A DNA stretch of 64,000 nt from NCBI GenBank assembly GCA_965285935.1, contig OZ260663.1, forward strand, positions 5,704,001-5,768,000, written 5' to 3'. A program made the translations under genes and the position numbers. Every line of letters starts with the position of its first letter. Position 1 is the first letter of the stretch. The stretch comes from Ophelia neglecta. Taxonomy: Eukaryota. Shown here in pieces: positions 1,865 through 62,544 of this stretch. The notes beneath the pieces were generated by a model. That model did not search any database. It was not told the origin of the DNA and saw nothing but the letters and a program-made list of their open reading frames with translations.

Positions 1865-1938
1865 TTATATTTCTTCATATTCACCATCATTACCGTACGG
1901 TTTCATGCCTTCATAGGGATTGACCTTGTTGAAGTTTT
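1865..1938 (-). CDS. Gene A last exon, ENFNKVNPYEGMKPYGNDGEYEEI*
   Basis: tttccag acceptor, 74 nt to TAA; same length and near-identical in all four paralogs. Confidence 0.85.
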
Positions 1939-4900
1939 CTGGAAAAAGTATAATCAATACCGAATATTATCATCCGAAAAACTATTTAGACATTTTCATT
2001 GGTCACTATGACAAAAGTAGCATAAAAACACAGCTCAGAAATAATAAATACTTATGAATTTTTAAGTTAAAATCATAATCAAATGTCAGCTGACAACACT
2101 TCAGTGAAGCGCTTTTTCGGAAATATATTTAAGTGCTACATATAATTTTGAAAGTTCTGATTTAATACTCTTAAATAAAGGACAATTTTACTGATTATGT
2201 ACGCTTTATTATTCCATTGAATTGCTCAGTACTGCTTCACTTACCGTATTCCCTCGCAGATGGTTTTCTTGTCTCATAGGGATGAGCGTCAGCTTTCAAG
2301 GACTCGTCGTGTACATTGATATTGGGCGAGTTTTGCGCCAGGTTGTCTGCAGTCTGTCTAGTGTTATCCTCTAGATAGCAAGGAGCCAATTCATGTTGCG
2401 TTTTGAGGTTTGATGGTGATTGTGTCCTGCCCATATGCCTCCTACAAATTAAAGGTCAAATTGTTATAAAGACAACTCTTAAAGTCGCTGTAACTATTAA
2501 AGCATTGGTATACCAGCTAAGTTAAGTTAGTAACATTGATAAACATAAGCTACTCGTTGTCAAAGTATGTGATATTGACGTATATGATGTGTTATATGTG
2601 AGTCACGTCAATGTTAATTACTAGTCCGTGCTTATCTTCGGAAGCCGTTGTTGTTTATACTAAAAACTTCAATTCTTAGGTTTTGGAAATCTACATTTTA
2701 AAGGAAGATAAAATAATGAAGAAATATAAAAGGAAAGATTTAAACCCGATAAAGAAGGCAGCGACGACAGCGATCACCAGTATCACCACACCAGTAACCG
2801 CCCCAGCTATCACGCCGATCGTGTTGGGATCGCTGTTCTTGCTTGCGATGGGAGTGCTTCTCAATGCCTCAGTGGTGGATTCTGTTGATGTCCAAGCCTG
2901 GGATGAACCGCCTGAATCTGAGACATGACACAGTTGATTAATAAGAACGAGTTGATGCACTTGTCTCCTTAAATTTATCAAAATATCTCATAAAGTATAA
3001 CTCAAATTCTCATAAAGAATATCTCAAGGTCTCATTAGTATGTATCAAGGTCTCCATAAGTACATCTCATGGTCTGACTAAATGTATCTCAAATTCTCAT
3101 TAATGATTTCTCATGGTCTCATTAAGTATGCCTCATGGTCCTATTACGTATATCTCAATGTTTTATTTAGAATATCTTATGGTCTCATTAACAATATCCC
3201 ATGGTCTCATAAAGTATATATCATGGCCTCATTCAGTTCATCTCACGGTCTCTCTTGGTTTAAGTTATGGTTTGACAAAAAATGGGCAGAAACTTTTAAT
3301 TGAAACATTTGGTTATAGACAATGCTAACAATGTGCGTCTTAATTGTAAGCGCTGGCTACCTTGATCTTTGTAATTAAATTAATACATATACATAATACA
3401 TGTATATTGTAATTATACTTTTATATACCTCTATAATCAGACCACCTGTCAATTAAGACCACTAATATGAAAACAGTGTAGTATACTTTCAATGTTGAAT
3501 AACCTGCCTAAACAGACCACCCTCAAAATCAGACCAGTATTTACCATTCCTTTGGTGGTCTTAATTCACAGGTTTCACTGTACTATGTCTTGACAGTTTT
3601 AGCATCTAAGAGTTAATGGCCTTTTCTTGATTAATGATTTTACTTTGTCTGCCGGGTAACCTCTCCCGTTTTTACCACGTGTCAATAAGCTTTAGCACAA
3701 TCATTTATCTGAAGGTTTGAATCGGTCTAGATTACCTAAGGTTTTGGCGCTCATTGGATGTTCCTTCCCTGTGTATGATGATGGTCCCAAATAAACTGTT
3801 CCGTTTTCCAGTTTTCTATACGCTGTCAGTTTAAACAAGTATTCCGTATTTGGTTGTAGGTTGCCTACAGTTCCCTCCTGCCATTCACGATCTCTGTATG
3901 GTACGTTTACTCCCAATGTCCACACTGTGTTACTAGCCAGGCGGTAGTATATATGATACCCTACATATTTGACAGCTTCTGCCGAGACATTAACCCCTTC
4001 CTTCCACTGCCATGTTACAGACCAGGCCGTGACCTCGGAGGGAGTTTCTTTCACTACGTCACTTGTTCCAAATTGCATAAGCGCTATAAGTGAACGGTCA
4101 AATAAAGTACACTTTCTACAATAAAATTTGTCTATAAAGGGACTACCCCTATACCGAGAACACTGTTAGGGAGCACACACCGGAAATTCTTAAATCTATA
4201 AAACATTGAATGATAAATTATCGAAAAAAAAAAAATATATAACGTCGAGTTGAACCCGCATTATTTATTTCAGAGGAAGCATATGCGTTCCTATGATACA
4301 AACAATCATGCACGGAAGAAAGCAAACCAACACAAGACAACTACAAATAGAAACAATTGGCTGCTGGATATGTTACGATGTGTAACTAGTCCTATATTCT
4401 GCTGCCGCCGTTTAACTAGTATAACATATAACATCGCCTAAAACCTTGGGCCTTCATACTTGGCGCGACTGTACTGTGAATAAGGTATACATTGCACATC
4501 TCTGCTATTAGAAGTCTCATTAAAGGTCTTATTAGAAGTACTGCTGTATCGAAACAAAGTTAGCATAAAACATGCAGCCGACGACGATGTAAATTTCGAT
4601 ACTTCGAAGTGTATACTCAGCGACGGCGGGTGGGTGGAAGATACCGACACTAAGCAGAAGAAGACTATTAATTATTAACCAATATTACTTAACAACCAGG
4701 CTTATAATCATAGTAGTTTACACTCACGTAGTTTCACATCACATCTCTCTCCAATCCACCACTCCTCGTTAATGTTATAAGAGCAGCCCTCAGTACATAC
4801 GCCTGTATCTTTATGACAAGCCTTGTTCTTGCAGTGAGGACGACAACAATTCTCTCCCACAAGATCTTCGGCACATCCTGAAACTAACAACGGAGGGCTG

Positions 4901-7900
4901 AACTTACAACAAATAGCTGATTTCAGTTGACACAAATAAAAGATGACGTAATAATTGATCAATTAAATAGTGTAACAACCAGATGCGCTAGTCTTTGCCG
5001 TGAGGAAGGGGTGACCCGACTCTTTGTATGACGTAGTTCCGATGTGCATTTTACCGTCAGTAGACTTTCGGTACACCTTTAAGTCAAACTCGTAATGTGT
5101 ATCTGACCGTAGGCGACTCACAGTCCCCTCTTGCCATTCTGTCTGTCTGTATGATACGTTAACCCCTGTGCGCCACTCTGCGCTATCAGGTTGTCTGTAG
5201 ATTATATGGTAACCCACATAGGTCACGGCCTCCTCCGGGACGTTAACCCCTTCTTTCCACCGCCATGTTACAGATTGGTGTGTGATTCTAACTGGAGATT
5301 TATCAACCTCGTCTTTTGGCCCGAACTGCATTTGTGCTACGAGATATAAATTGAAAGAGAAATCAATCTTAAGGGAGTAATCAATTCATAATACTGGAAG
5401 TGGGTGAATGGATATACGAATTAAAAAAATGGCTCAAGTGTTTTTATTAAGTCCTCTACCAAAACCCCTTCCCCTATCGCGCTAAATTAAAACTTCAATC
5501 CTTCATCCTCTGTAAATCTTATGGAGTTATTCAAAACCAAATGTCAGACTATGTACACAGATGATGTACTACGATCGAACAACAAGGAATTATATTCATT
5601 AATGATATAGTTCTTCTATGTCCAAAGTGATATTTATATATGAATATGATGCTTCCACTTTCAAAACAATAAAAAGGTCAAATTATCTTTGTGCCCAGGA
5701 AATTATTAATATGGACCTGTCTTTGATATCTAGATGGTGTTCTGATTGGTTCGATAGAACCTAAAGTAAAAGCAAATATATATTATTTAGCAACAAGCAC
5801 GACACCTCAGAATAGGCCAATAGAAGAAACAGGGAGTGTTACCTATCTAGATATCATTTTTGAAAAATAAATACAGCTTGACTTCTCATATCACTCACTT
5901 ATCACGAAAGGCAAACAAACGTATAGCCTGACTGTTAAGACTGAAACACACTCTCTCGACAAAGTCTCAAAATGGCCAACAAAGTCTTTGTGAGGCCTCT
6001 GTTAGAATGTTGGACTACATTTTTGACTCGTGCTCTGAGGCTAATAGCATTACACTTGAAAATGTTCAGTTCGGCGCGATAAGACTTATATCTGGTATTA
6101 GGCGTGGTACGTCTCATATTAATTGTACTCTGAGTCTTGTTTAGACTCATTAGCACATAGGCGAAAAGTATCACAACTTTGCAAATTCTATGATGTTATT
6201 TATCAGATTATTCAGTTGACCGATACCATGTTACCTCTCTTCAGTCATCTATGGTATATAAAATCATAGGATCGGACAAAGAACACCTCATAATACCAAT
6301 TTGCAGAACTTCATACTTTAAATTGTATTCTCATATTGTATGTTTGGCAACCCGTCAGAATTAGCTTTCAACTATTGAGGGAAACCAATTGAATAATTAT
6401 GTTTAATCTAAACTAACGACAACGACATTCAAATGTTTTGGGCAAGAGGTTCAACACATAGGCAGGTGGTTTTACCCTACCACCATTAAGAGCCGATACG
6501 TCGTATTAACCTTTACCTAACTGCAACCAAACCACCGCCCCACCTCCCCAACTTCTATACTAAAAACTGACCACCCGAGAGTTGCATTGGTTAGTCATTA
6601 GAATGTGAATGTGCATAAGGCGTGCATGTAACACTAGTGGCTTAATTGAATATACAGGATAAATTCCACATTTTACACTTACCTAGTTGTACATTACATT
6701 TGTCCCCAACCCACCAGTCCTTGTTGACGTCATAGGAGCACCCACCGGTGCACTCTCCGGTCGCCTTCGTACAAGAGAGGTTGCTACAATGAGGGCTGCA
6801 ACAATTCTCTCCCACCAGACCTTCGTGACACACGGGAACTAAAAAAGAACAGGTTACCATAAATTCTATTTGGAATTTGGAAATGGCACATCCTAAATTG
6901 CAATTTTTTAGGACATATTTCTGTTAAAAAGAATACGTGTAATTACAGGAAACGTTGGTCGATGCTGTAAGTGTCGAGTGACCCGATTCTCTGTAAGAAG
7001 GAGATCCCAGGTGTATTTTTCCATCAGTGTCTTTTCTGTACACGTGTATGTCAAACTCGTATTCTGTATACTGTTGCAGATGGCTGACAGTGCCTTCCTG
7101 CCAGTCACTCTGTCTGTATGCAACGTCCACTCCCCTTTTCCACTCTTTATCTGCGTTACCAACTTCTCTGAAGTATATACGGTAACCCACATAAGGCACG
7201 GCCTCCTCCGGGACTTTCACTCCTTCCTTCCAACGCCAAGTCACAGACCGGGGCGTGATTCTGAGTGGAGAACGATCAACAAAGTCCTTGGATCCGAACT
7301 GCATTTTTGCTGGGGTGAACGAAATGAAAATAATAAGTAATATTATCCAGGTTATGGTCAAAAGTAATCACTAGGTGGGCTAGAGGAGGGTTAGGAATGG
7401 GTTTGGGGGAGTTATGAGGGGCGCATGGGTCTGCTTAATTAGCATTAACAATTAACACATACAGATGTTCTTGTGACCCCCCCCCCCCCTCCTTCCATCA
7501 GAGGATTGGTGCTTTATGAGAAAACTATTGCCTGGTTTATAGAAGAACCTAATACAATCCACATTCATTAGGAACTGAGTAACACGAAGTTTAAATTGTG
7601 GTTTATATGTTCTAGCGTTGTCAGCAATAGATGACAAAGAAATCCGTTTAGCCGAGCTTTAAATATATATATACATTTTTTATTTCCTACACTTAGTTGA
7701 ACGTGCATAGGTATGATCATTACATAATGTTTTAGTTTTCTTAGTTGAAATATTGGATTGTAAGTCTCACAAGGTGAAACACATTTTAATACATGCCGTC
7801 TGAGCACAATCATATGCCAACCGAGGCTTGGAAAATCACATCTTTATCAAATTTGAAAAATGAAAAGGTGAGCTATGCAATCCATTGATATAATCAGACG

Positions 7901-10900
7901 CCTTTACCTGTTCTCGACCATCTGTATGAGGGTAGTATGTTTCTGGTACTATTAAATATGCAGTGACTTATTTAATTTGAGCGTATGTCTGGGTCAACCT
8001 TGTACCTAGACTGAACTTGTTTCAATGTATTACAAAGTGTAACACTTTTTTGATGCCATCACTTACACGCCCTATATCTACATATTTTGATAAGGGTTTA
8101 TTCTGAGAACCTTGACACGGGCTTCAACAATTGTGAAATCATATTACATTGACCTTTTTATAATAAAGCGCCTACAATGCATATAACTTACCACCTGTCT
8201 TTTACAATGGTTAAATGAAACGAATAAGAAGCCATGATGCGACTGGATATTCAGACCTGGGACTTCCGCTAACCCCTTCATGTACATTTTATTACAATTG
8301 TCTAGGGTTAACTGTGGCCTGAGGCATGAAACAAGATGTTCCCGTGAGAAGTTTAATTGTGACATGAAATCCTCGGTTTGCTTGAAATGTTCGTGCTGAG
8401 ACACAGGTTGGCATAGGGCAGGGTCTCCTCTTTTCAGGCTTTTTGTGCTTTTGCTTGCACGAACATCTTTGCATGATTTTTCCACATAGACCCATTAAGT
8501 GTGAAGCCAAGATTCTAACATTTCATACTGTCTGTTATCTCATGAATCCTCAAACATGAGTCCCATTGGGCTATTTTCGCTCATTTTTATTTGGTTTAAT
8601 ACGATGTCACATATTAATCGCTATTCTCTTTTATAAGTGGTCAGCTGGGAGGGCAATGATATCTCGGAGCAATACCAATCATCTGTATTTTATGTACACG
8701 GAGACAGGCCACCATCCGACCCGAAGTGTCTGGGCTGCTTGTGTTTTGTGGGAGATCTCGTATGCGTTTGTCGGGTGCTCTGTGCTCTCTGTCATGCATT
8801 TCTGTTGGTCCAAAAGTCAGATTTACTAATAATAGGCCATAGACAAGTCCCGAGAAGAACACTGCAGGGTACAGTTAAGCGAGAGTCCAAGCATTCCCTT
8901 TGTCAGATACTGATCCAAAACATACGAGGGCGTCATGTTTACTTCGGGCTTTAGTGATTCCTTGACTTATTGTTTCATTCGGAGCATCGGTTGTCCTTGC
9001 TAAAGGCACCCCGGGATGAACCGTTGAGAGCATTTTAGGGACATACCATCTCCGAGATTAAACCTTACGTCAATCGTAAGGTTCGCCAAGGGTCCGAACC
9101 TTACAGTCTCACAATTTTCAACGTTAAATGCCAGTCTCTATTTTCTCCGGGATACATTGTCAGATTAGTCACATCATAAGCGTTACCCACAATTCCTGAT
9201 CCTATACCGTATGTCGAACACTCATGGCTCAATTTGACAACGATCATCTCGTCATAAAGACATTCGAAGAGGAGTATTGACAGCTGTCCGACTTGGTGAA
9301 GGCCGAGCAAGACCAGGAACCAGTCCGTGAATGAGCAAAGGATCTTCACCGCACTCCCGAAATAACGGTAATAGTCACGTACCATTCTCTAGAATTTCCC
9401 CAGACTCCTTTTCGTATATAATATGATAACGGTTCCTCCGATCTAAACAGAGCCGTACGCCTTTCGACACTCGATAAACATGGCGTATATAGTGTTTTCC
9501 TCCGACTGGAGAGGTACTGATGTCTCTCGAACATTCGAGCAGCCCTTTACGAGGCTCCTTGGAGAGGGTGCAGTGTGTTGTGCTCGACTGTCCAGCACTC
9601 CAGTCGCTTCATGAGAATTCCTTCATACAATTTACATAGCATTGTCAATAGGGTATTTTTTTGATAATTATCTATATTGGTAGGACTCCCCCTCCTTTGA
9701 AGGTAATCCTATGTCCCGGCGAAAGTTTCTTGGCATGTACTCAAGTCGTGTAATCTGGTTGAAGAAGTTGTTTATTGCTAGGTTTTCTTAGAGAGGTGAT
9801 TCCCGCTCCCAAGTGCACAGATCATTCTCTATTTACTTTTGAAATATGCAACAAAGTGAGCGTCCTGTAAGGGTGTGGCTAGGCTTTTTAGATATTTAAA
9901 CCATTTGCATTTAGTTGCGTCTACAGATCAGGCCATTGTACCATCATCCTTTTGAATTACGTACGCGTTGCCCTGGAATTGTCTTCCGTCGTAAACTGAC
10001 CATCTGCCAGTTCGAGCCCTAGTCTAGCTCTAGATTTTTGATAATAAATTTTGTTCCACTTCGTCTTTCTCGTGTTTTGCTCTTCACCGTTCCTTTCTTC
10101 AGAATCCTTTGGTGACTTTAAATGCCATCTAGGGCGCGTTTGTTGTGGCGTTTAGTCTGCTTTTTATTAGTGACATTAAGTTTTGGAAGTAAATATACTA
10201 AATGAATTATATGTGCATATCAATGTATTTCATACTAACGTATAAGTTTATTACAGTTAACTCCAATCCACCATTCCTCGTTCTCGTCATAGTTACACCC
10301 ATCGGTACACATTCCTGTCTCCTTCGTACAGGCGAAATTCTTACAGTGGGGACTACAACAGTTCTCTCCTTGCAGATCTTCATGACATCCTGGAACAAAA
10401 TAGCGTATTTTAGCTAGAATAACATAAGTTACAATTTTCTGGAACCAATTGCAACCTAAACGGAACAGGAAGTGTAACCTTCGTTCACGTCGGACTTTGC
10501 TATGAGAGCCTTGTTTAAAATCAATCAGAAGTGTGTATATGCTTTGTGGTGAAGTCGCGATATTCATTGCTCCCCTGTCTACTGAAATTAGGCATTCTTT
10601 GCATATGCTTATTCTTCATTTTTATATATCAATCGTCGTCATTTGCTTCGTTAGAAAATTTTGTAAACCAAGAAATTTCAAACAATAAAAAGATTGTTTG
10701 AAAAGAGTATTTTTATGTGGTTTTTGTGAGAATATGACTTAATATTACCATTGGTCATGTTTGTCCGAGCTTTTAGTTCAGCCTTGGCATAGTCAACGTA
10801 GGATGTCGGCCCGATCACAACGTCTCCATTTGCAGTTTTTCTGACGGCTTTCAGGTCGAACTCGTATTCTGTATCTGGCTGCAGTTCGCCCTTATTGCCC

Positions 10901-13900
10901 TGCTGCCATTCACTCAGTCTATACGGGACGTCAGATCCTAGCTTCCAATCTCTGGTACCAGTTATACGGAAGTAGATTTGATAGCCAACGTAGGGAGCGG
11001 ACAGATGTGTTATGGTTACTCCTTCCTTCCAACGCCAAGTCACGGAGTTGTGTGTTACTTTCACGGGATTCGTGTCGACGGCGTCACTTGATCCGAACTG
11101 CATAACGGCTGAAACAAAATAGTTTGCTGAAATAGTTGGAACACAACACATGTGTTTCATGATTGTTCATATCAAGTTGTACAGTACATATACAGGGACA
11201 CTTGATAGGTTTTTTGATAGGAAACCTGTTTTGAGTCGAAATGTAGTATTGTTTACTGCTCAGAATATACTGTTAACATTTTTGAACACTTTGAAATTGG
11301 GCTTTATAGGATTTATGCTTAACAATTAAAGTTCGTTGACCAGACACTTTTTTAAACTACTTTATTTGGCAGAAATTCCTACTTAAGGACGAACCCGATG
11401 ACTTACTTGGAGCCTTATAGCGTGTACCGGTAATACTCACGTATTTCTATATCACACCTGTTTCCCACCCACCAGGCACCGGTATCATCGAAAGAGCAGC
11501 CGAAAGTACACACTCCCGAATTCTTGTCGCACCTGTGTTGCTTACAATAGGAACTGCAGCAGTTTTCACCAACGAGGCCTTCATTGCACCCAAGAGCTAA
11601 TACATTTTGCATACAATGAGAACAGAAAAGCAGTGTTATTTAAAGTATGTTGAATTTGAAAACACAATGCATTGGATATCAAGGTCACTGAACAAACTAG
11701 GTATCTAAAATGTTTTATAATATATCAGCTACCTGACTAATGAATTTGCCTTAGTATATTATTTAAATTAAATACTAATATCATGTGTACAATAAGAAAG
11801 AGCTTGTAATTCTTATAATAAAATAAATAAATTAAATCTGATTAATAAACAGATGGTGTCTATTCTTAATAATTCAAAATCTTGTTCCTTAGTTAAGACA
11901 TTAAGGACACTTACAAATCGGAGGTAGTGTTCGAGCTGAAAGTGCGAACGTCGGAGCTCCAATGGCTGTTTGTCCGTTTATAGATTTCCTGTAAGCCTTC
12001 AAATCAAACTGGTAGTCAGCGTTTGGCTGTAGTTGGTCCACAGTCCCATTGATCCATGTATTATTTGTGTATGGCACGGTAACCCCGAGGGTCCAGTTAG
12101 ATGTATCCCCCAAACGGTAGTAGATGTAGTAGCCTATGTAAGGTGCGGCCTGCTCTGATATGTCTGCACCTTCTTGCCATCGCCATGTGATGGAGTGGTT
12201 TGTTACTATAGCTGGGTATTTGTCTACGTTGTCTGCGGTATCAAACCCCATAATGGCTACGGAAATAACATTTATTTATTCAAGTGTACTATACCTAATG
12301 TAGTTGCCTATATTTGACTGTGTGTACGGTAACATAAGTCAGTAAGAGTTTTTTCAAAATCTTGGAAAGCATTTTAAAATGTTTTAAAATATGTTAAAAA
12401 TTGTGCAGACTAAAAAATTATCAGAAGTGACAGCTTTGACCTAGCCAGTAAAATCACACTATTCTCTGCACGCAATACCAGGCATTATTGATCTCAGATA
12501 ACTCACGTATTTCTACATTACACTCGTTTCCAATCCACATCGGTCCGTCGATATCTTGGAAACAGCCGTCAGTACAGCTACCGTCATTGTCACATGAGTC
12601 ATCTTTGCAGTGCCCGCTACAACAATTTGGGCCAAAATGTCCAGGATTGCACCCTGTAAAGTTAAAAACCATCGTTTAATCCACCGTACACAACGCACTG
12701 AAGGGAAAACGGTATTGTCTCATGACTCATCACATCACGGACATAAAAATACAACATGTCACAAGTGACATTACTTTACTGGGCAAAGCTTATCACATTT
12801 ACAATATTAACCAGTCATAGTTATAGTCATCGCCACTGGCGCATTACATTTATTCAATGCAACTTTATTCTATCCAAATTACCATTATTACACTATGGTA
12901 TATTTCGAAAATTAACATTTAAAATATTTTTATTTAAAGATGAAGCTTGACCTTTACATATGTGTACGCAAGCATGCACATGGGCAACAGCATACAGCCA
13001 TGCGCCGTAAGGCCCACCGCACCGACAAACCAGGGAGCCCCAGACCCACCAAACGTGCCCGCCCGCAGAATGAAGGCCCCTACCAACCAGACAAAAACAA
13101 AAGACCTACAAATAGTAAAGCATGGCAAGCTTCATATATATACGTTATTGCCCAATCGGCCGGGCAATACACTTCTCCGGACGGATACGCCCGCAGAGCC
13201 CAATGTCCCCCAGACCCACCGCAGCACGTCGGGCGCCCACGGCCAAGAGCACGGGGCAAGCTCAGTTGGAATGCTTATACAAATAATAAATAATAGATTC
13301 ATTAAAACAGGATGTGCCCAACTAAACTTGATCTCAGTTCTTAGATCAAAGAGTGAAATACTAAACCCGAACAAAAATATACTGGCAACGATTGCCTTTA
13401 AGAAGAGGAAAAAATGGAAAAAACAGAGAATGGATGACCTGACAATTTATAGTATTGAGAACCTGGGATGTGAAAAACAAATTATGCCTTAGAAGCCAAT
13501 AATATTCCATATTCTATTAAAAAGGAGAACAACCAAAAGCAAAGCAGGACCTGGGTGTTTTGAAGGTGGAGGTACCTATAGACGTAACAGGCCTCCAGGT
13601 CACAAGTATTTGCTTGAAAGTAATTCTTAATATAGTAAGAAAACAGTGTAGACTAAGTGTTTTGACCTTACATTTCAGGAGTTTAATTTATTTTGGTGAA
13701 ACTGTTGTACCTAACGCAATACTTGGTAAATTAATGCTTTTCTCGGGAAGTGTTGTATTTATTCTAGTTTATTTGTATTGTAACTGTGAATATCTGAAGT
13801 TTGTTTTAAGTCAAGTTGGTCGAAATATTTAGGTAGATTACTGTTCGAGTATTTACGGTAGGATTCAGTAAGTGAAGGGAGTAGAGGTCCTCCAGCTTCC

Positions 13901-16900
13901 ATTCTTTGAAAATAGAGTTCATGTGTGCATTATATCTACTACGTGTTATTGTTTGAACATCCTTTTTCTGTAATCCAAATATCATATTTGATTGCAGTCC
14001 CCATGCCAGAATGCAATAATTCAGGTGTGGTAAATTTAAAGTAATATAAAGTGATTTCTATATGTGTTGTGGAAGGATATGCTTGAGTTTCTTTAAAATA
14101 CATGTACATTTAGATATTTTTATTTGAAATTTTGGTTAGATGTGTGTTCCAACGAAGGTGTTTGTTTATTTAAAGACCTAGGAAATTAAAATTATGAATG
14201 CATTGTAGTTGCACCCCATATATTATGTTAATCAGAGATATCTACTACTGTCTTTATGGCCGAAGTTTTTTTTTTCACATTTAAAGACGATTTAATAAGG
14301 TTGAGTAAGTCACTTATTTTGTTGTGCTTCTCGTTAATGCTGTCACTCATATCATAGGAAGGATATGGTGGTTTTAATATGCTAAAGGTACTGCAATCTT
14401 TGTTTTTTTATTCAGCACTTTAGGTGTCTTCCGTATTTTTTCGTCTCCGTCTAACCAGTTGAGAAGCTTTCCGTGAATCATTCTAGGCCTGGTTTTTGTA
14501 CGGTCTTCCCTTGCTGGCGTCCTATCGATTCTTTCGATTATTACGTCTCTGTGTATTCCCAAACTCACCAACAGCACTTTTTTGACAGGCTCTTTTTAGG
14601 GATGCGCTTTCTTCTACCAGATAGCTTACAACGCAATTCAATACGAGAAACAAACTTATTCATACACTGACACGCCAGAAACAAACGTTCAGAGAACACA
14701 CGCTCTACTCCGGTGGGCTGGTGCTGATTGTTTAACTTTTGCTCGCTTCGCTTTGATTATATCTGTAAACGAGTAAACTATCTTCTAGATTACTAGAATA
14801 CTTCGCAAAAAATGAAATAAACTAAATAGTCTACCAGAAGAAAATATTTAACTCCGCGGTCGAGTTGTCAGAGTAGTGATATACACTCTGCCAAGATAAA
14901 CATTACCCCGGAAAGGCTGCGCTTTCCAGCAAGTACCGCTGTGCCGCCATGAATAACCTCCCTGACATCAGTGGTAGGGTTTCGTTGACACAGAACTTTT
15001 ATTTTCATTTTTAAAATACGACACATTGACTGACAACAAAATCAACTGATGCAGCAAACATTTTCCTTTAATATTCCAAAATAACAAAACGATTGGAAGG
15101 ACATATTTTCAGGGTATTTAAGCTTTGATGGCAAGAATAGCTTAAAGTGAATGACCACCAGTCGTTAAAAGTAGATATGGTATGCCTTTAATGTCTATTT
15201 ATGGAGCACTTGTCATGAATGGCGATCTTTCAATTACACAAAGACGCTATATCGACGGATTAAAGGATGTAACAATCTAAAATATCTTATAAATATGCAA
15301 TGTAAAATGATCAACTGGAGAATTAAACCGTGCATATTGTTTAACACATTATACCCCGTTGTCTGTGTGAGGTACATTGGAAATGAAATTCATTTTGGTG
15401 GCACTTCCTTCTACCTCTACGCGAGAGTTATAAATTTTCGAAGCCTCATGCTATCGTCGTATCTTACCATTGAGTATACTTGTAATCAGGCGAAGTTTGG
15501 AATAGAGAACAAGACCAGGGACCCGTTCATTGTGCACACGGGATAGCTAATGTATTCATGTCTTGGACAATCACAGTGATTGTTACAAACCTTTAGGCAA
15601 AATTATGAAAATGGATACTTTACGCTTTCCTGCGATTTATTCCAAAATGTTCGGCATGATAAGTGTGATTCCAAGTGATGACCACATTTACTCGACTTGT
15701 TTTAGGTATTATATTGAACTTTAATGTATTGATCAATTAATTGTAAAGTACAATCTGAAAGTGCACATGCGCGAAATTTACGTATAATTTGTCTATCTGT
15801 CCTATTCCAAAACACTTATTCTCTGTTTCTCATTGTACGTTGTCCGCTAGCCCCTGCTGTTAATCACTATTATTGTCGACGGTAGTTTATAAAGTAGCAT
15901 ATATATATATATGATAATTAACCCGGCCTGACTTGGTAGCCGCTTCCTGCCTGTGCAATATGTCGGATCAGGTTCTTGTCTCTAATGGAGATCTATGTAC
16001 GAGGTCGGCGGCATCAAATTCTATCTGAACTGCGACGAGCCTATTAATATATTAATGTATTGTAGATAAAATACTGGAAGAATTCTGATGGAACGGGACT
16101 GGATACCAGGCAGAGAAAACAAATTATGTATTAGCAATAGTCCACTAAAACGGTCAGAAATCATCAGGAAGCACAAAGAAATCACCAGGAAGGCAACAAA
16201 GACCCATCTCCAGCACCCTATCAGTCAATAAGTTTGTTATAAAATTAATAGTTATACATTGATATAGTGTGTAGGCAGAAGGTGGATTCAAACTTACAAC
16301 CTTTGGAATGAAAGACCAACCTACCTTCAACTTTAGTTCCTATGACCTGCACCTCGCATAGAGTAGCGTTGTCGTTGTTTGTTTTGTAGTACCCAACGTA
16401 TGTCCCGACGGCACTGCATGATACATTTATATAGGAGGGAGTATATACGGGTTCGGAGCTACATTTCGGATTTTGATGATGTGTATGGTTTCCTATCAAA
16501 ATGTCGAAGTTATCTAGTTCTGAAAGATCAATTGTGTTTAAAAATAGAAAGGTATAGGCAAACTGAGACCTGTTTCCATAAGTCCATAGGTTTGATGTAA
16601 GGTTAATATATGTGCGATTAGATGTATATTTATATTTATATATATAATTGACTGACATATGATATTTACTTTCATTGGCCCCGTATACCAAGACACTTGA
16701 GACTCTGTACAAAGCTTCTAAATTCACCCTCCACCATGCATGGCTATCCTCTGATCGAGTAATATAGGTACATTTGCCATCTGCGAAGGTTCCCTCGACG
16801 CTACCATCCACCACCTTGCCAGCTCTGTCTACGGAACCACTACTCTGTGTGGCAGGTTTATTGGTACTTACTATATCAGCTGCAAACAAAAACGGTATAT

Positions 16901-19622: not shown

Positions 19623-20450
19623 CTTTCGATCGTTATAGAATATTCCAAGAGAAAGTCAAAACACTATACAATGATCAAACATGGCTTCCTTGTCCGTCCC
19701 CCAAGCAAAGATGGCGAGTCTATTTATACTGATTCGTGTGCCATCATTCGTAGCAAGGATATATGCCTTACCTGCTGATATTACCTGCAGTCTCTCTCTG
19801 AGATGTGACTTTCACGGTTGAGCACCTCCGATGAATATATTTACAGTTTTGAATCTCTGTTTTCATTGTAAGTTTTTTCATACTTCTATATACTGCACAT
19901 TATGATTTTACAGAACCGATTCATTATACATAGAACACGGAAAGTATCATTCAGTGTGTGCGACCAACTGTGATGTATTGCCGCTGTAAAGGGGCCATTT
20001 TACTTCTAACTATTAATTTGTACTTAACGTGGGGTATAGCACTACATGTATGTTTACTATAGAGAGAAAACCCGCCTTAGATTGTGTCAGGCATATGACA
20101 TGTACAACTAGTATCGAATCGGTATAAACATTGACAGAGATTCGACTATAGTTAGACTGTTATTATTTGAAAGATCTTGAAGCAGAGAAGAAAATAATAG
20201 TTTGCTTGCTTCCCCTGTATGTAAGGAGCCATTACAATAAAATGAATCTGACATTACAATCATTACTTCAGCGATGGGAACTAGATAAGTCATAAGATCA
20301 TATAGCCCACAGTTTAGTTTTAATGTTATACCGAAATATTGGAGGAACATATGTTAATCCTTGATTAGAAGGAGGCTTAGTCCGTCTATGAGATAGTGGT
20401 TTAATCGGGACATGGAATGCACATCGCAGTAATTTGTAGGATATACCTGC
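19623..20450 (-). promoter_or_regulatory. Conserved upstream/5'UTR block of the receptor genes
   Basis: Alignable by eye with 34706-35560, 49567-50440, 55869-56250 and weakly 51060-51330; includes a conserved AAGATGGC (YY1-like) motif and a CTGCAG|GTAA donor-like site. Confidence 0.4.
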
Positions 20451-24321: not shown

Positions 24322-24395
24322 TCAAATTTCTTCATATTCACCACCATTAACGTGCGGTCTCAGGCCTTCATAGGGATTGACCTTGTTGAAGTTTT
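24322..24395 (-). CDS. Gene B last exon, ENFNKVNPYEGLRPHVNGGEYEEI*
   Basis: 74 nt; YxxL-x8-YxxI. Confidence 0.85.
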
Positions 24396-39609: not shown

Positions 39610-39683
39610 TCATATTTCTTCATATTCACCACCATTACCGTGCGGTCTCAGGCCTTCATAGGGATTGACCTTGTTGAAGTTTT
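39610..39683 (-). CDS. Gene C last exon, ENFNKVNPYEGLRPHGNGGEYEEI*
   Basis: 74 nt; ITAM spacing. Confidence 0.85.
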
Positions 39684-50930: not shown

Positions 50931-51000
50931 CATGTTCGTCTCCTTTAACCAGTCGTGTTACCACCACTGCATACATCCATAGCCATATCATAAAGGTCAT
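50931..51000 (-). CDS. Second candidate leader exon MTFMIWLWMYAVVVTRLVKGDEH(G)
   Basis: 70 nt; strong phase-1 donor G|gtaagg; hydrophobic core; WLxxY...VKG similarity to the other leaders. Confidence 0.6.
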
Positions 51001-55305: not shown

Positions 55306-55800
55306 ATGACTATCATCTTTTCAATGCAGTTTGAAATGGATTGATGGCAGATTGTGAACAAAGATAACAATAGTTTCAGAAAGGACCTGTTAATGGTGCA
55401 ATGTAGTTTGTACATTAGAGGTCTGTCCGGCAAAGGTATGTTAGGAACAGACGTTTGCGTCTCTGTGATTTACTCTGTTTCAGTCGGTGGTATTGGGATG
55501 CTTTAGGACTTCACAGTACAGTCGGCCTACTTGTTGGATGACGTAGAAATGCATTTTCCACGGAATAATTTTGTCAGATCAAATACGTAATAAAAACAAT
55601 GGTAATTTTAGAATTTAGCGTTATGTTTAATATTAACAATTCGAATGATCACCATTTTCAATTTACTTTACCCCAGGATTCATCTCCTGAGGCTCGACCA
55701 CCAACACGTATTCAAATGCTGAGAACACAATATTATCATGCAAAAACCTAAGTTGACAAGTTGAGAAATTTTGCAAACAGGAGAATAATATAACCATTAC

Positions 55801-55868
55801 CGTTGACAGTGCTTTTAAATGTATATTTTCAGCCACCCATCCACTGATGTTTGTACTGCCACTGACAT
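55801..55868 (-). pseudogene. Orphan, frameshifted leader exon (MSVAVQTSVDGWLKIYI*)
   Basis: 68 nt versus 70 nt in intact leaders; same gtaatg donor and flanking block. Confidence 0.65.
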
Positions 55869-57462: not shown

Positions 57463-60400
57463 TCATATTTCTTCATATTCACCGCCATTACCGTGCGGTC
57501 TCAGGCCTTCATAGGGATTGACCTTGTTGAAGTTTTCTGGAAAAGTTGCCTTAGAACTCGGTTATTTGTGATACTATCAATTTATTTTGAACCAGTTACA
57601 TTCACAATCAAATGCCATCTTACAGCAATTTCTTTCTCGGAAATATATATAAGGGCTACAAATACTATCGAGAGTTTTGATTTAAACTGACACTACTTTT
57701 ATGTATGTAATAGGCCTACCTTCTGTCAGTGGGCTTGACTGATAAAGCACACATACATAGATTTTTATATCAATATATAAAATAAATTAATGATAAATAC
57801 ACACTATTATTTCGTTAAACTGCTCAGTATTGCTAAACTTACCGTACTCTCTCGCTGATGGTCTTCTTGGTTCATAGGGGTGAGAAACACATGGCAAGGG
57901 CCCGTCGTGTCTATTGATATTAGGCACAATTTGCGCCGGCTTGTCGTCCGTTTTATTGGAGTTTGTCTCTAGATCGTCAAGGGGCAAGTCGGTTTGACCT
58001 TTGACCCTTAATAGTGCTTGTGTTCTGCCCATACGCCTCCTACAATCGAAAGTTCAAATTGTCATAAGTCCAAACTTCGCTCAAAATATTAAAGAATTAG
58101 CCTGCCGGTTAAAGTACGTACATCAATTACAGGGAAATAAAATTAAATGCAGAAATATATTTATATATAAATAATGTTTTAACCCGATAAAGAAGGCAGC
58201 GACGACCGCGATACATAGTATCACCACTACAGCCACCGCCCCAGCTATCAGGCCGGCCGAGGTAGGGATCACTGTACAGACGCAGTTCGTGCTTGTGATG
58301 GCAGTGATTGTGGATGTCGGAGTGGTAGCTGTCGTTGATGTCCAAGCCCGAGGTGACCCGCTTGATTCTGAGAGTTGGCACAATTGATTAATTAGAATTG
58401 TTAGATTCTGCTTTTATACCTAAAAAAAATACAATACTCTGAACTCTGATTGGTTCATTGAAAATCATACTTATAAAAAAATGACCCAATTATTTAATGT
58501 CAAAACATCAGCAGTCATAATTATTAGGAAGCACATGATTTACTATGCGTTAACAAACATTTATATGACGGTTTGGCATCGCTCTGTTATACCTAAGGTA
58601 GTGGCACTCATTGGATGGTCCTTCCCTGTGTATGACGATGGTCCCAAATACACAGTTCCGTTTTCCAGTTTTCTATAAGCTGTCAAATTAAACAAGTAAT
58701 ACGTGTTTGGTTGTAGGCCGCTTACAGTCCCCTCCTGCCAGGCACTCTGTCTGTAAGATACGTCTACTCCCACTGTCCACGCTGTGTTACTAGTCTGGCG
58801 GTAGTATATACGATACCCCACGTATCTGACAGCCTGTTCCGGGACAATAAGCCCTTCCTTCCACCGCCATGTTACAGACTGGGACGTGATATTGGCGGGG
58901 GTTTCATCAACAACGTCACTTCCTCCGAATTGCATTATTGCTATAAGGACAAATTTAACGTAAGTACAATATTATAACTTAAATTTGTCGATGGTAGGAG
59001 TACGTCCATGTTCCCATAACTGGAAGCGGACACAATTCCCGGAAACACCTTCGAAAAGAGGTGACTCTCTCTATTAAAAGAAATCAATACACAAAATGAT
59101 AATTCATATTCCGACCCAAATATGTCGGGCTGATCCTTTTGAATATCACATCTTCAGCAAGAGCTTCTTTAATTATATACCAGTTATATATAACAGTTGC
59201 ATTCATTATCAGCGTAGTTTACACTCACGTAGTTTCACATCACATCTCTCTCCAATCCACCACTCCTCTATAATGTTATAAGAACAGCCCTCAGTACATA
59301 CACCTGTATCTTTATGACAAGCCTTGTTCTTGCAGTGAGGATTGCAACAGTTTTCTCCCACAAGACCCACGGAGCAACCTGAAACTAACAACAGGCAATT
59401 GTGAACATAGAACATATTGTTTATAGAAGTTAGCGAAAATGTATGTCGAAACTATTAAAGAATTATACTATGACTGGCCAAGAAAATAGTGCACTAACCA
59501 GATGTGTGTGTCTTTGCCGTGAGGACTGGATGACCCGATTGTTTGTATGACGTATGTCCGAAGTGTAATACGCCGTCCGTAGACTTCCTGTACACCTTTA
59601 TGTCAAACTCGTATTCAGTATTTGGCTGTAACTGGCTGACAGTCCCCTCCTGCCATTCTCTCTCTCGGTATAAGACGTCCACACCTATTGCCCACTTAGT
59701 GTCACTCGCTTGTCTATAGATTACACGGTAACCCACATAGGTAACGGCCTCCTTTCGGAGGCTAGCACCCTCCTTCCACTGCCATACAACCGACTGGGAC
59801 GTGATTCTGACTGGTTTTCGATCTACCAAATCACTGGATCCGAACTGCATATTTGCTACGATACATAATGCGAAATGTAGAGATCAATCTCACGGAAATG
59901 ACTTTAATATAAAGTTGCATGTGGGGAAGAGGACACGATTTTGGGTATATGCTGTAGTGTTTGTCCTTTCCCACACCACTCTCAAAGCCAGACACACACA
60001 TTTCGATTGTACATATTATATACAAAATAAACAGATTTGAGCAGCCACAGTTATTCAGAAGTGACTGTTTCGTGATTACACCAGGTGGTTTTATGTAAGC
60101 CATTCTGTGTATATCTTTTACAAATCCACACATGACGCTGCTTAGATTGCTCTCTGTGACCGCACCAAGTTAATACCAGTATGGCATTCTTTTTAAGGCT
60201 AGTGCAAACATATACAACTAATAAATAACCCTCTAACTCTCCATGACCTATGGATGAACACGTAGATAAATTCAGAACGATAACATATTGACATTATTTG
60301 ACATAGACATATCCAAATATATAGATTCGAAAGACCCATACACGTCCTAATCAACGAACAATTAAGGGAACACCACGATGTAAAACATTCAAATGAATTC

Positions 60401-62544
60401 CTAATAGACAGATTATCGAGTCACATCGAACAAATACAGACACGTACACAGAGTCATTTGGGATTGCTCATACAATTTCTTATTTGACGTTGGTAAATTA
60501 TAATTATAGTTGAAACTCCAATATTTGGAGTTTTTTGACCACTTACGTATTCGTACATGACATTTGACCCCCACCCACCATTCATCGTTCACGTTATATG
60601 AGCAACCCTCGGCACATATTCCTGTTTCCTTGTTACAGACTAGGTTCTTACAATGAGGGCTGCAACAGTTCTCTCCAACCAGTCCTACGTCACATCCTAC
60701 AACTTAACAAGATACCGGTAACCATATAATAGGTGTTGTACATTAGATGATTTGAACAAGAGTCGAAAATTTGAAGGAAATAATAATATTTGACTGAAAT
60801 ACAAATGTAGCTACAGGAAACGTTGGTCTTCGCTGTAAGGGCCGGATGACCTGAGTCTATATAAGAAGTGGCTCCAAGGTGTTTTTCTCCATTACTTGAT
60901 CGCCTATAGACTTATATGTCAAAGTCGTATTCTTTATACTGTTGTAACTGACTGACAGTTCCTTCCTGCCATTCTGTCTGTCTGTATGGCACGTCCACTC
61001 CCTGTTTCCAGTCGGTGGTACCAGATCGTCTGTAGTATATACGGTAACCCACATAGGGCGTGGCCTCCTCCGAAACGTTTAGCCCTTCCTTCCACCGCCA
61101 TGACACCGACAGGGCCGTGATTGCGGCTGGAGATCGATCTACCTCGTCACTGAATCCGAACTGCATTTTTGCTATGAAGAATAAGTTTCGTATTAAATTT
61201 GCTGCTACTTCTTAAAACTAGAAAGAACTATAACTTGGCTACAACTTAGGAGAAAACTGGCGTTGGAAACCCCACCCTTATTGGAACCCTATCCCCTCAA
61301 TTACACACGTTATTAATATATAAATATATACACACGTAAAAACACACGTATCTAAGGGAGTGTTTGTGCCCACCTCACCCGAATCAGCGGAATCTTGACT
61401 CCTCGGACTTCTCCGACAATTCGAGGAAAATATGATTTAATGTATAATAATTTCAGACTTCATGTAATGGGGAAGCAATAATAAAGCTAAATTGCATAAA
61501 TTATGGCTTTTTTTACCAACATATCTCTTTAATTTTTGAAGCATTACATGAGGAAAGTGTTTCGCATTTTCTGCAAACAATATTTATCAATGCGACGGCA
61601 AATGTTAGAGGGACTCAATAAACCATATTTCAGGGAGGGGGGGAGGTAACCTGATAAGTACACATTCAGTACGGGAACAATGGTGTCCAACCAGTTTGTA
61701 AGAACAGCGATGGAGAAGTGTCGGGGGTGACAGTCTAAGACGCCCAAGAATAGCAGAATTTTGTATTTCCTGGGACTTTCTGTTTTTGTAACAAATTTAC
61801 GTCCTCCAGTGAACATTTGACAGGCGTCAAGCAGTTTTTAGGGAGGCGGTGTAGGGGTGGGGGCTGAGGGTGGATGTGGTATGGGGTGGGAAGGAGTAGC
61901 TGTCCGTAAAAAGAACTTCCATGTTATTCCATTTGTCAATTTTATTTATTTCTTTGGCCTTGACTCTAGGATCTATGCACATAGTGGTGCTTTACTGCTT
62001 TTCGAAATTACCTGTTAAAAACAAGCTAGCCGCCAAATAAAACATGCTAGAATCTATGAAAACTGAGACTAATGGAATTTGGGCTATTCGATTGAGCCTC
62101 CTGCATGAGTTTAAACATAAAAACAGCGGTATCATAAAATAAGCTCCCATATGACTTAATTAAGATCATCGTAGATGAAGTTGTGAATATGGAAATGCAA
62201 GTCTGTAATGACTAATAAACGTGCAGACGGCGTACAAAAATACCTATACTACTTCTAAATAAGCCTGTGAATAACTTTTTTGCATTGAGTGTGGCATTGC
62301 ATCATAAACCTTTCAGGGAACTCGTATATATACAGCTTACACACTTATCCAGTGGTATATTAGAATATAGATGGTATAAATTCTGAGATTTACGTATTCT
62401 TACATAACATTTATCCCCAATCCACCAATCCTCTTTGACGTCATAATCCCACCCCCTCGGTACAAGCTCTGGTCTCCTTCTTACAGGCATGGTTCCGACA
62501 GTATGGACTACAACAGTTGTCCCCCACCAGACCTGAGTCACATC
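57463..62544 (-). pseudogene. Gene D: probable pseudogene paralog of C, 5' end outside the window
   Basis: Exons 62544-62394 (151 nt, +1 frameshift), 61171-60815 (TAA at 60914-60912), 60702-60547, 59855-59499, 59378-59229, 58940-58593, 58367-58184, 58039-57843, 57536-57463. Confidence 0.75.

What the first reader, a model, noticed from the sequence alone, without database searches (positions are those of the whole stretch)
1865..62544. Tandem cluster of F-type-lectin/(EGF-FN3)n receptors with ITAM tails: candidate invertebrate immune or recognition receptor family
Seen: four same-strand paralogs combining a fucolectin-like head, strictly alternating 8-Cys EGF-like and FN3 modules, one TM and a non-catalytic tyrosine-rich tail. 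The copies differ by module number, domain loss, chimerism and pseudogenisation. Known: ITAM-bearing clustered receptors occur in Hydractinia (Alr family, Ig/FN3), and Draper/CED-1/MEGF10 couple EGF repeats to ITAM signalling; FTLD+EGF+FN3 ectodomains are otherwise familiar on catalytic receptors (RPTP/Tie-like). I do not recognise this exact architecture as a named family. Inference: a birth-and-death family of activating pattern-recognition or allorecognition receptors.
Basis: partly seen in the sequence, partly recalled or inferred. Interest (0 to 1): 0.9.

Follow-up and report, generated by a model that had tools for sequence, protein, structure and literature searches.

The report
ITAM-tailed twins of receptor phosphatases
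Four neighbouring genes of a marine invertebrate encode surface receptors with a lectin-like head and a short tail carrying an immune-type double-tyrosine signalling motif. The next gene along has an almost identical outer part fused to a tyrosine phosphatase instead, a layout that recalls vertebrate paired activating and inhibitory immune receptors.

Summary
The minus strand carries four tandem genes, A to D. Each has a signal-peptide exon, a two-exon F-type-lectin-like head, strictly alternating 8-Cys EGF-like and FN3 exons (all introns phase 1), a Ser/Thr stalk with one TM helix, and an ~89-residue tail. The tail ends in YEGL-x8-YEEI-stop (YEGM in A).

- B has lost the head and is a chimera.
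- D carries a stop and a frameshift.

The genes are not a family of their own. They are tail-swapped members of a very large lineage-specific family: at least 497 candidate FN3 exons, all scored ones on one chromosome, many members being tandem-domain receptor tyrosine phosphatases.

- The gene just left of the window (Z) is 94-96% identical in DNA to A and B, from promoter to the end of the last FN3 exon. It then continues into its own TM and two phosphatase domains.
- A homologous YxxL...YEE[I/V] terminal exon occurs in about 28 more copies.
- A second species has interleaved Tyr-tail and phosphatase genes, but with x4 spacing.

The lectin head lacks the fucose-binding triad. No RNA data exist, and any immune role is inference. 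Another follow-up in this scan reached the same paired-receptor reading on other DNA of this genome. I found no description in the literature.

The parts
1865..19730 (-). Gene A, complete: signal peptide, FTLD-like head, 5 EGF/FN3 pairs, TM, Tyr tail
   Evidence: All exons are open.
19553..19622 (-). A exon 1 (coding part): Met plus hydrophobic signal peptide, donor in phase 1. TATAAATA lies at 19728.
16332..16862 (-). A head: two F-type-lectin-like exons (cores 16862-16668 and 16523-16332) with a short intron that reads through
   Evidence: Pfam F5_F8_type_C_2 at E 6e-5. PDB FBP32 at 2.5e-8 and eel fucolectin at 4e-6. Fucose triad not kept.
3737..12651 (-). A array of five EGF-like/FN3 exon pairs. 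In-frame cores: EGF 12651-12514, FN3 12251-11916, EGF 11588-11448, FN3 11103-10750, EGF 10387-10247, FN3 7304-6948, EGF 6830-6690, FN3 5331-4981, EGF 4875-4735, FN3 4078-3737.
   Evidence: Pfam fn3 26.9 bits. 94-95% nt identity to gene Z, introns included.
2746..2917 (-). A stalk + TM exon: Ser/Thr-rich stalk and an uncharged TM helix. Starts in phase 1, ends in phase 2.
2245..2441 (-). A cytoplasmic exon 1: basic stop-transfer stretch, then HPYE and REY(E)NF (a YxN site)
   Evidence: A profile of this exon finds only these four genes in the genome.
1865..1938 (-). A last exon: NPYEGM-x8-YEEI-stop. An ITAM-like motif whose first half is YxxM.
24322..34811 (-). Gene B: signal exon 34705-34636, no lectin head, 5 EGF/FN3 pairs. 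Chimeric.
25623..31505 (-). B array of five EGF/FN3 pairs. Cores: EGF 31505-31368, FN3 31105-30770, EGF 30458-30318, FN3 29974-29621, EGF 29219-29079, FN3 28160-27804, EGF 27686-27546, FN3 27210-26860, EGF 26754-26614, FN3 25964-25623. Crossover at about 25800-25830.
   Evidence: 95.9% nt identity to gene Z.
31877..34404 (.). Stretch in B that replaces the ~5.4 kb holding the lectin exons in A. Contains a LINE reverse-transcriptase fragment on the + strand (ORF 32049-32324).
25214..25385 (-). B stalk + TM exon
24699..24895 (-). B cytoplasmic exon 1
24322..24395 (-). B last exon: NPYEGL-x8-YEEI-stop (canonical ITAM spacing)
39610..49566 (-). Gene C, complete: signal exon 49566-49497, head, 4 EGF/FN3 pairs, TM, Tyr tail
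48578..49113 (-). C head: FTLD-like exons 49113-48919 and 48781-48578
40917..47846 (-). C array of four pairs. Cores: EGF 47846-47706, FN3 47538-47188, EGF 45742-45602, FN3 44402-44052, EGF 43932-43792, FN3 42541-42191, EGF 42104-41964, FN3 41258-40917.
40504..40687 (-). C stalk + TM exon
39988..40184 (-). C cytoplasmic exon 1
39610..39683 (-). C last exon: NPYEGL-x8-YEEI-stop
57463..64000 (-). Gene D. Runs off the window: its head is at L006:1328-1885, i.e. 65.3-65.9 kb. The first module pair is lost, the next EGF exon is frameshifted (62542-62401) and the next FN3 exon has an in-frame TAA (61166-60816). Intact: EGF 60694-60554, FN3 59850-59500, EGF 59376-59236, FN3 58935-58594.
58184..58367 (-). 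D stalk + TM exon
57843..58039 (-). D cytoplasmic exon 1
57463..57536 (-). D last exon: NPYEGL-x8-YEEI-stop
55801..55868 (-). Relic of a fifth signal-peptide exon (2-nt deletion, in-frame stop), with no gene body behind it

Best explanation
Shown:
- A to D are type I membrane receptor genes. The ectodomain is an F-type-lectin-fold head on a stalk of alternating 8-Cys EGF-like and FN3 modules. Each module is one phase-1 exon, so modules can be gained, lost or skipped in frame.
- The ~89-residue cytoplasmic tail has no enzyme domain. It carries four to six tyrosines, ending in YxN and YEG[L/M]-x8-YEEI at the C-terminus.
- The genes belong to a very large, chromosome-restricted family, many of whose members are tandem-domain receptor tyrosine phosphatases.
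- Gene Z, 12 kb downstream, shares promoter, introns and all ectodomain exons with A and B at 94-96% DNA identity (about 95% protein identity). The similarity ends four bases into the intron after the last FN3 exon. There Z continues into its own TM and PTP D1-D2.
- A second pairing of this kind exists among the two-module genes further left.

Inferred mechanism:
- Segmental duplication with breakpoints in that intron repeatedly re-wires one ligand-binding ectodomain to either of two outputs.
- When the Tyr-tail form binds ligand, a Src-type kinase phosphorylates the terminal tyrosines, which recruit SH2 proteins (a Syk/Shark-type tandem-SH2 kinase, Src-family SH2 at YEEI, Grb2 at YxN) and activate the cell.
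- The phosphatase twin, seeing the same ligand, removes such phosphates and sets the threshold.
- This would be a paired activating/inhibitory recognition system with the inhibitory enzyme fused directly to the receptor.

The ligand (a glycan or a protein) and the cell type are unknown.
For: - Gene models, splice phases and open exons.
- Domains: FN3 by Pfam. F-type lectin homology in the PDB: FBP32 2.5e-8, eel agglutinin 4e-6, pneumococcal fucolectin-related protein 7.5e-6.
- Tail motif: present in all four genes. The last exon is far better kept than its flanking intron and than the preceding tail exon. For A against B, C and D, 4-5 nonsynonymous changes over 56 sites compare with 42-45 over 151.
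- Wider occurrence of the terminal exon: homologous exons (EN..K.N.YE[G/A]LR...EYEE[I/V]) occur in gene E and in 11 two-module genes nearby. Genome-wide the pattern gives 43 hits against 0 in the control, nearly all inside the family's clusters.
- Z is a tandem PTP receptor with an intact VHC|SAGIGRTG site split by an intron.
- Z shows 94-96% nt identity to A and B over ~14 kb, ending at the exon/intron border.
- Each FN3 position forms an A/B/Z triplet with 100% support, and the second PTP gene is nested among Tyr-tail genes.
- Family size: at least 497 FN3 candidates, with all 150 scored at E<1e-36, and 1538 PTP-exon candidates.
- Constraint: dN/dS is 0.5 for A/B/Z ectodomains and 0.3-0.9 per exon class in the two-module subfamily.
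- A second species has interleaved Tyr-tail and tandem-PTP genes of the same family.
- The TM helix has no charged residue, which fits signalling in cis.
- SH2 tyrosine kinases are encoded in the genome.
Against: - No RNA data, so splicing, expression and tissue are unverified.
- A has YEGM, not YxxL/I.
- Spacers vary between paralogues and species (x8 here, x10 or x11 in other paralogues, x4 in the second species). This does not fit a strict tandem-SH2 ITAM and points to two independent docking tyrosines.
- A Syk/Shark-type kinase was not demonstrated. A tandem SH2 locus on C8 could not be resolved.
- The lectin head lacks the fucose-binding His/Arg/Arg.
- There is no sign of strong diversifying selection at whole-exon level.
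- D is damaged and B lacks its head, so part of the cluster may be decaying.
- An opposing function for Z and A/B is inferred from domain content only.
Confidence: 0.6

Rival explanations
1. The tails are generic phosphotyrosine docking sites, not ITAMs. YEEI would bind Src-family SH2, YxN would bind Grb2, and YxxM in A would bind PI3K p85. The receptors would then act in adhesion, development, gamete or settlement signalling rather than in immunity, much as many receptor phosphatases act in cell contact.
For: - Spacer length is not conserved: 4, 8, 10 and 11 residues.
- A has YEGM.
- Extra conserved tyrosines lie upstream of the terminal pair (HPYE, REYENF).
- dN/dS is below 1 throughout.
- No Syk-type kinase was shown.
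Against: - B, C, D and E fit the textbook consensus Yxx[I/L]-x6-9-Yxx[L/I] as quoted in PMC9546547.
- The dual-tyrosine arrangement, rather than a single site, is what is kept across subfamilies and species.
- The massive tandem expansion with copy-number turnover is typical of recognition or immune families.
Confidence: 0.25
2. The Tyr-tail genes are catalytically dead decoys of the phosphatases. They compete for ligand or form heterodimers, and the tail has no signalling role of its own.
For: Ectodomains are about 95% identical to that of a neighbouring RPTP. In the two-module subfamily the TM and first cytoplasmic exon are shared between the PTP gene and the Tyr-tail genes.
Against: The terminal exon is the best-conserved part of the tail (dN/dS 0.36). 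Its tyrosine motifs persist across subfamilies with about 50% ectodomain divergence and in a second species. A mere decoy would not need it.
Confidence: 0.08
3. The four genes are non-functional debris of an unstable RPTP cluster: truncated duplicates on the way to pseudogenes.
For: D has a stop and a frameshift, B has lost its head, and a relic exon 1 lies at 55.8 kb. TE insertions lie in introns. There is no expression evidence.
Against: - A and C have every exon open with intact splice sites, a TATA box and polyA signals.
- dN/dS is clearly below 1.
- The same tail type is kept in about 28 copies and in another species.
Confidence: 0.07

Closest known systems
Vertebrate paired immune receptors (KIR, Ly49, LILR, SIRP, PILR, CD200R and similar; from my own knowledge)
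   Same: Clustered, rapidly duplicating genes whose activating and inhibitory members have near-identical ectodomains (here 94-96% in DNA) and differ from the membrane inwards. They arise by duplication and recombination near the TM exon.
   Different: - The inhibitory partner here is not an ITIM receptor that recruits SHP. It is a receptor with two phosphatase domains fused to it.
- The activating partner carries the ITAM-like motif in its own tail instead of using a charged TM residue and an adaptor.
- The ectodomain is lectin-fold/EGF/FN3, not Ig or C-type lectin.
Hydractinia Alr allorecognition family (PMC9546547)
   Same: A large clustered invertebrate family of type I receptors with many pseudogenes, an FN3-like module near the membrane, divergent tails, and ITAM or ITIM motifs in several members.
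   Different: Alr ectodomains are V-set/I-set Ig-like and the inhibitory members use ITIMs. No phosphatase-fused twins are reported. There is no sequence relationship.
Draper / CED-1 / MEGF10 engulfment receptors (from my own knowledge; Draper ITAM cited in PMC9546547)
   Same: EGF-rich type I receptors that signal through an ITAM in their own tail to Src and Syk/Shark kinases.
   Different: Draper has EMI/NIM and a long pure EGF array, no lectin head and no FN3. It is single-copy and conserved. The EGF-like modules here match no EGF profile.
Receptor-type protein tyrosine phosphatases with FN3 ectodomains (R3 type such as PTPRB/J/O, and CD45; from my own knowledge)
   Same: The parent family: FN3-containing ectodomain, one TM, PTP D1(-D2). 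Gene Z and many family members are of this kind.
   Different: A to D have no PTP domain. The FTLD head and the alternating EGF/FN3 modules are not a described RPTP ectodomain. The expansion to hundreds of exons is lineage-specific.
F-type lectins (eel agglutinin 1K12, striped bass FBP32 3CQO, pneumococcal SpX-1 2J1R)
   Same: The head exons align to these with E of 2.5e-8 to 7.5e-6, including the CTH-like and WWRVDL motifs.
   Different: His52 is Tyr in A to D. Arg79 is lost in all copies. Arg86 is Glu in A and Lys in C and D. Binding specificity is therefore unknown.

Membership tests
ITAM (immunoreceptor tyrosine-based activation motif) | Two Yxx[L/I] boxes | tested here: met
   B, C and D have YEGL...YEEI, and neighbour E has YEAL...YEEI. 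Not met in A, which has YEGM.
ITAM (immunoreceptor tyrosine-based activation motif) | Spacer of 6-9 residues (consensus as quoted in PMC9546547) | tested here: met
   x8 in A to E. Other paralogues have x10 or x11, and the second species has x4, so the spacing is not conserved family-wide.
ITAM (immunoreceptor tyrosine-based activation motif) | Cytoplasmic position in a membrane receptor | tested here: met
   The motif is encoded two exons after the TM exon, with the reading frame continuous across phase-2 and phase-1 junctions. Splicing is inferred, not observed.
ITAM (immunoreceptor tyrosine-based activation motif) | Phosphorylation by Src-family kinase and binding of a tandem-SH2 Syk/ZAP-70/Shark kinase | not testable with these tools
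   SH2-kinase loci exist in the genome. A Syk-type gene was not resolved.
F-type lectin domain | Sequence homology to solved FTLDs | tested here: met
   phmmer against the PDB: 3CQO 2.5e-8, 1K12 4.1e-6, 2J1R 7.5e-6. Pfam F5_F8_type_C_2 at 6e-5, below its cut-off.
F-type lectin domain | Fucose-binding triad His, Arg, Arg (the H-x24-R-x-D-x4-R/K motif) | tested here: not met
   His is replaced by Tyr in A, C, D and Z. The first Arg is absent in all copies. The second is Glu in A and Z and Lys in C and D. The two-module subfamily keeps His and the second Arg only.
EGF-like domain (8-Cys, laminin type) | Conserved cysteine framework | tested here: met
   Eight cysteines are invariant or nearly so in 40 modules from two species.
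EGF-like domain (8-Cys, laminin type) | Match to an EGF profile or fold | tested here: inconclusive
   - One module hits Pfam EGF_TEN at 8e-4, far below its cut-off.
- A profile finds no PDB match.
- The AlphaFold model has pLDDT 66.
- The best Foldseek rows are laminin LE, integrin I-EGF and netrin, at E of 7-10, which is not significant.
Fibronectin type III domain | Match to PF00041 | tested here: met
   26.9 bits against a cut-off of 25 for one exon and 22.9 bits for another. 16 exons align with 25 invariant positions.
Receptor-type protein tyrosine phosphatase | Cytoplasmic PTP domain with the C-x5-R site | tested here: not met
   There is no PTP exon anywhere in the window. Neighbour Z has D1 and D2. 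A to D are relatives of RPTPs, not RPTPs.
Paired activating/inhibitory receptors (functional class) | Near-identical ectodomains joined to different signalling parts, in one cluster | tested here: met
   A and B against Z: 94-96% nt identity over ~14 kb and dN 0.023, with the break 4 nt into the intron after the last FN3 exon. A second such pairing is seen in the tree.
Paired activating/inhibitory receptors (functional class) | Same ligand, opposite effect on the cell | not testable with these tools
   Needs binding and cell assays.
Draper/CED-1/MEGF10 | EMI domain plus long EGF array and NPxY | tested here: not met
   Pfam finds no EMI or EGF domain in the exons scanned. The tail has NPY, not NPxY.

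The most novel reading that the evidence does not exclude
An invertebrate has independently built an NK-cell-like paired receptor system on a non-Ig scaffold. Dozens of lectin-fold/EGF/FN3 receptors exist in two interchangeable versions. One carries an ITAM in its own tail, and the other has a tandem tyrosine phosphatase fused to it that would erase the same phosphotyrosines. The two versions are kept about 95% identical outside the cell by repeated tail-swapping duplications. This could be the self/non-self or pathogen-sensing system of the lineage.
Probability: 0.3. Interest if true: 0.9.

Novelty: new variant of a known kind. Interest (0 to 1): 0.72.

Why it matters
Paired activating and inhibitory receptors are a hallmark of vertebrate innate lymphocytes and myeloid cells. 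How often, and by what means, other animals reached the same logic is an open question in comparative immunology.

Here the logic appears on a different scaffold and with a different inhibitory device: a receptor-fused phosphatase in place of an ITIM. The recombination breakpoint is still visible at a single intron.

The case also gives:
- a natural experiment on how exon phase symmetry allows ectodomains and signalling tails to be re-wired;
- a possible role for the very large RPTP expansion in this genome;
- a concrete set of gene pairs (Z against A and B) for ligand, expression and signalling tests.

Tried and rejected
- **Spliced models.** All searches were made exon by exon by reference, so no full-length architecture search or full-length fold was run.
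- **Public protein search.** The FN3 profile returned only single-exon fragments from unannotated assemblies and generic, mostly bacterial FN3 proteins. The nearest named protein is a partial Capitella teleta hypothetical protein. No named orthologue was found.
- **RNA.** No run on record as RNA holds the locus. The three runs laid are short-read DNA contigs of one sample and show no exon-exon joints.
- **EGF module.** Profile against the PDB, Pfam, AlphaFold2 and Foldseek gave nothing significant.
- **Species identity.** A BEL/Pao retrotransposon ORF gave best named hits in a sea urchin, oysters, a mussel and a bryozoan at 28-40% identity, which is not informative. Run and assembly accessions appear in no paper. 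The phylum stays unresolved. A lophotrochozoan is likely, from the Capitella hit and from another follow-up note.
- **Syk-type kinase.** SH2 and tyrosine-kinase Pfam scans of the genome found SH2-kinase loci and one tandem-SH2 locus (C8:14.985 Mb).
- **Rest of the cluster.** It could not be fetched, for the same reason.
- **Diversifying selection.** Whole-exon dN/dS is below 1 everywhere except for tiny samples: A-Z head 1.1 from 10 changes, and C-D tail 1.7 from 14 changes. I make no claim.
- **PDZ ligand reading of the C-terminal EEI.** Rejected as the conserved feature, because relatives end in YEEVG or YEEVR.

Full report
**What is there**

The window (G000:C5:5704001-5768000, no N) has 35-43% G+C and the fragmented ORF pattern of an animal genome.

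On the minus strand, stop-to-stop ORFs fall into three recurring classes:
- about 115-residue FN3-like units (…QFG.SD.VD…VTWRWKEG…);
- about 47-residue units with eight cysteines (C..GLVGENCCSPHC…WWIG..C);
- lectin-like heads (…ATQS…C[ST]YIT…WW[RM]V[ND]L…).

Acceptor and donor sites are conserved, and every ectodomain intron is phase 1. The modules are therefore symmetric exons that alternate strictly EGF-like, FN3, EGF-like, FN3.

- A signal-peptide exon (Met plus a hydrophobic stretch, phase-1 donor) lies 2.7 kb upstream of the head in A. It is preceded by TATAAATA about 100 nt away. Equivalent exons exist for B and C.
- After the last FN3 comes an exon encoding a Ser/Thr-rich stalk and an uncharged TM helix. 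It ends in phase 2.
- A 197-nt cytoplasmic exon and a 74-nt terminal exon follow.
- AATAAA signals lie 70-177 nt after each stop.

All searches were made exon by exon by reference.

**Domains**

- Pfam supports FN3 (26.9 bits, cut-off 25) and a galactose-binding-like head (F5_F8_type_C_2, E 6e-5).
- Against solved structures the head's best matches are all F-type lectins: striped bass FBP32 at 2.5e-8, eel agglutinin at 4.1e-6, pneumococcal fucolectin-related protein at 7.5e-6.
- The fucose triad is not kept. His is Tyr in A, C, D and Z. The first Arg is missing in all copies. The second Arg is Glu or Lys.
- The 8-Cys module matches no profile or fold significantly. It is EGF-like by cysteine pattern only, and closest in pattern to laminin/MEGF-type repeats.

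**The four copies**

Self-comparison and per-exon annotation give the following.

| Gene | Content |
|---|---|
| A | complete: head and five module pairs |
| B | five pairs, no head |
| C | complete: head and four pairs |
| D | head beyond the window end; one frameshifted EGF exon; one FN3 exon with an in-frame TAA; two intact pairs |

In B, about 5.4 kb holding the head exons is replaced by 2.5 kb with a LINE RT fragment. Splicing from the signal exon to EGF1 would stay in frame.

B is a chimera. It is 97-100% identical to A and Z upstream of about 25830, and 93-98% identical to C and D downstream. The switch lies inside the last FN3 exon.

A relic fifth signal exon sits at 55.8 kb.

Short-read contigs of the source sample bridge A's last-FN3/intron junction without a mismatch.

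**The tail**

All four genes end in …REY|ENFNKVNPYEG[L/M]-x8-YEEI-stop.

B, C and D fit Yxx[I/L]-x6-9-Yxx[L/I], the consensus as quoted in PMC9546547. A has YEGM.

The terminal exon aligns cleanly between A and the other three genes, whereas the intron around it does not. It also has far fewer replacement changes than the preceding tail exon.

The exact tail is unique to these four genes in the 762-Mb genome. Homologous terminal exons are common, however:
- gene E, just right of the window, ends YEAL-x8-YEEI;
- eleven two-module genes to the left end YEAL-x11-YEEV;
- a degenerate pattern finds 43 hits against 0 in the control, almost all inside the family's clusters on C5, including 12 copies truncated after the first YxxL.

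**Context changes the picture**

An FN3 profile of the window's exons finds at least 497 candidates in the genome. All 150 scored ones have E<1e-36 and lie on chromosome C5. PF00102 finds 1538 candidate phosphatase exons.

The gene 12 kb downstream of A, here called Z, has a head and five module pairs. It then has its own TM exon, a juxtamembrane exon and two PTP domains, with an intact VHC|SAGIGRTG site in D1.

Z is 94-96% identical in DNA to A and B across about 14 kb, including the promoter, exon 1 and all introns. The similarity stops four bases into the intron after the last FN3 exon.

For Z against A and B, synonymous divergence is about 0.045 and dN/dS about 0.5. The A and B tails differ by dS of about 0.45. 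The ectodomain block was therefore duplicated recently and joined to much older, different 3' ends.

In a tree of all 47 FN3 exons of the 314-kb region:
- every module position shows an A/B/Z triplet with full support;
- the only other PTP gene (two modules, at 5.611 Mb) is nested among Tyr-tail two-module genes. It shares TM and first cytoplasmic exon with them.

In this stretch I count 17 Tyr-tail genes and 2 PTP genes. In the 96-100 Mb clusters PTP exons are frequent.

**Other species and literature**

The public protein library holds only single-exon fragments of the family, plus a distant partial Capitella protein.

The fragments come mostly from one ENA assembly (ERZ25069296) that shares no DNA similarity with the window. 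Its contigs show lectin head/FN3/EGF/FN3 genes ending either in tandem PTP domains or in terminal exons reading PYAEL-x4-YDY[I/V] or PYEEL-x4-YEEI. The two kinds are interleaved.

The two-output family is therefore older than this species, but the spacer is not fixed.

Full-text searches found no description of such a family. The nearest analogue in concept is the Hydractinia Alr cluster.

Another follow-up agent of this scan reached the same paired-receptor reading on a different piece of this genome. That is not independent evidence.

**Interpretation**

- Shown: gene structure, domain homology, tail motif and its conservation, membership in a giant RPTP-containing family, near-identity of the ectodomains of Z, A and B, and the position of the breakpoint.
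- Inferred: that the tail is tyrosine-phosphorylated and recruits SH2 effectors; that Z opposes A and B on the same ligand; and that the system serves recognition or immunity.

Against a strict ITAM reading stand the variable spacer, YEGM in A, and the unresolved Syk homologue. Against an immune reading stand the lack of expression data and dN/dS below 1.

Decay is real for D and partly for B. It is unlikely for A and C.

**Verdict**

The finding is best described as Tyr-motif (ITAM-like) twins of receptor tyrosine phosphatases in a tail-swapping, massively expanded lectin-fold/EGF/FN3 receptor family. It is a new variant of the paired-receptor principle and, as far as I could find, undescribed.

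Noticed in passing
G000:C2:96.40-96.67 Mb (outside the window): At least ten tandem units, each with two SH2 exons followed by PTP-domain exons at about 30-35 kb spacing. This looks like an expanded cluster of SHP-like (SH2-SH2-PTP) phosphatases, the usual effectors of ITIM receptors. Several exons carry stops.
   Followed up: no
window 55801-55868 (-): Relic of a fifth signal-peptide exon of the family, with a 2-nt deletion and an in-frame stop. It lies between the tail of D and the head of C with no gene body behind it.
   Followed up: partly
window 53177-53701 and 54781-55305: A 525-bp inverted repeat at 94% identity in the gap between genes C and D, probably the ends of a transposon.
   Followed up: no
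window 3251-3646: Very high-copy repeat in the intron between the last FN3 exon and the TM exon of gene A, with contig word depth of 1e4-1e5 in the source sample. It lies right beside the tail-swap breakpoint.
   Followed up: no
window 7400-10200 and 12746-13549: Insertions in introns of A that are absent from B and Z. The ORFs there are proline/threonine-rich or look TE-derived.
   Followed up: no
L007:5379-9638 (-), i.e. C5:5783379-5787638: An open 1420-residue BEL/Pao LTR-retrotransposon ORF. The best named relatives, at 28-40% identity, are in a sea urchin, oysters, a mussel and a bryozoan.
   Followed up: partly
G000:C5:96.56-96.70 Mb: Twelve family copies whose terminal exon stops right after YEGLNISGNNRA. 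Only the first YxxL box is kept (hemITAM-like or decayed), while neighbours keep YEGL-x11-YEEI.
   Followed up: no
L003:795-1615, i.e. C5:5674795-5675615 (-): An orphan EGF-like plus FN3 exon pair downstream of gene Z's phosphatase domains. It is a remnant of another copy.
   Followed up: no
L029:34-654 (-), ENA ERZ25069296: A fibrinogen C-terminal domain gene lies beside the family's genes in the second species.
   Followed up: no
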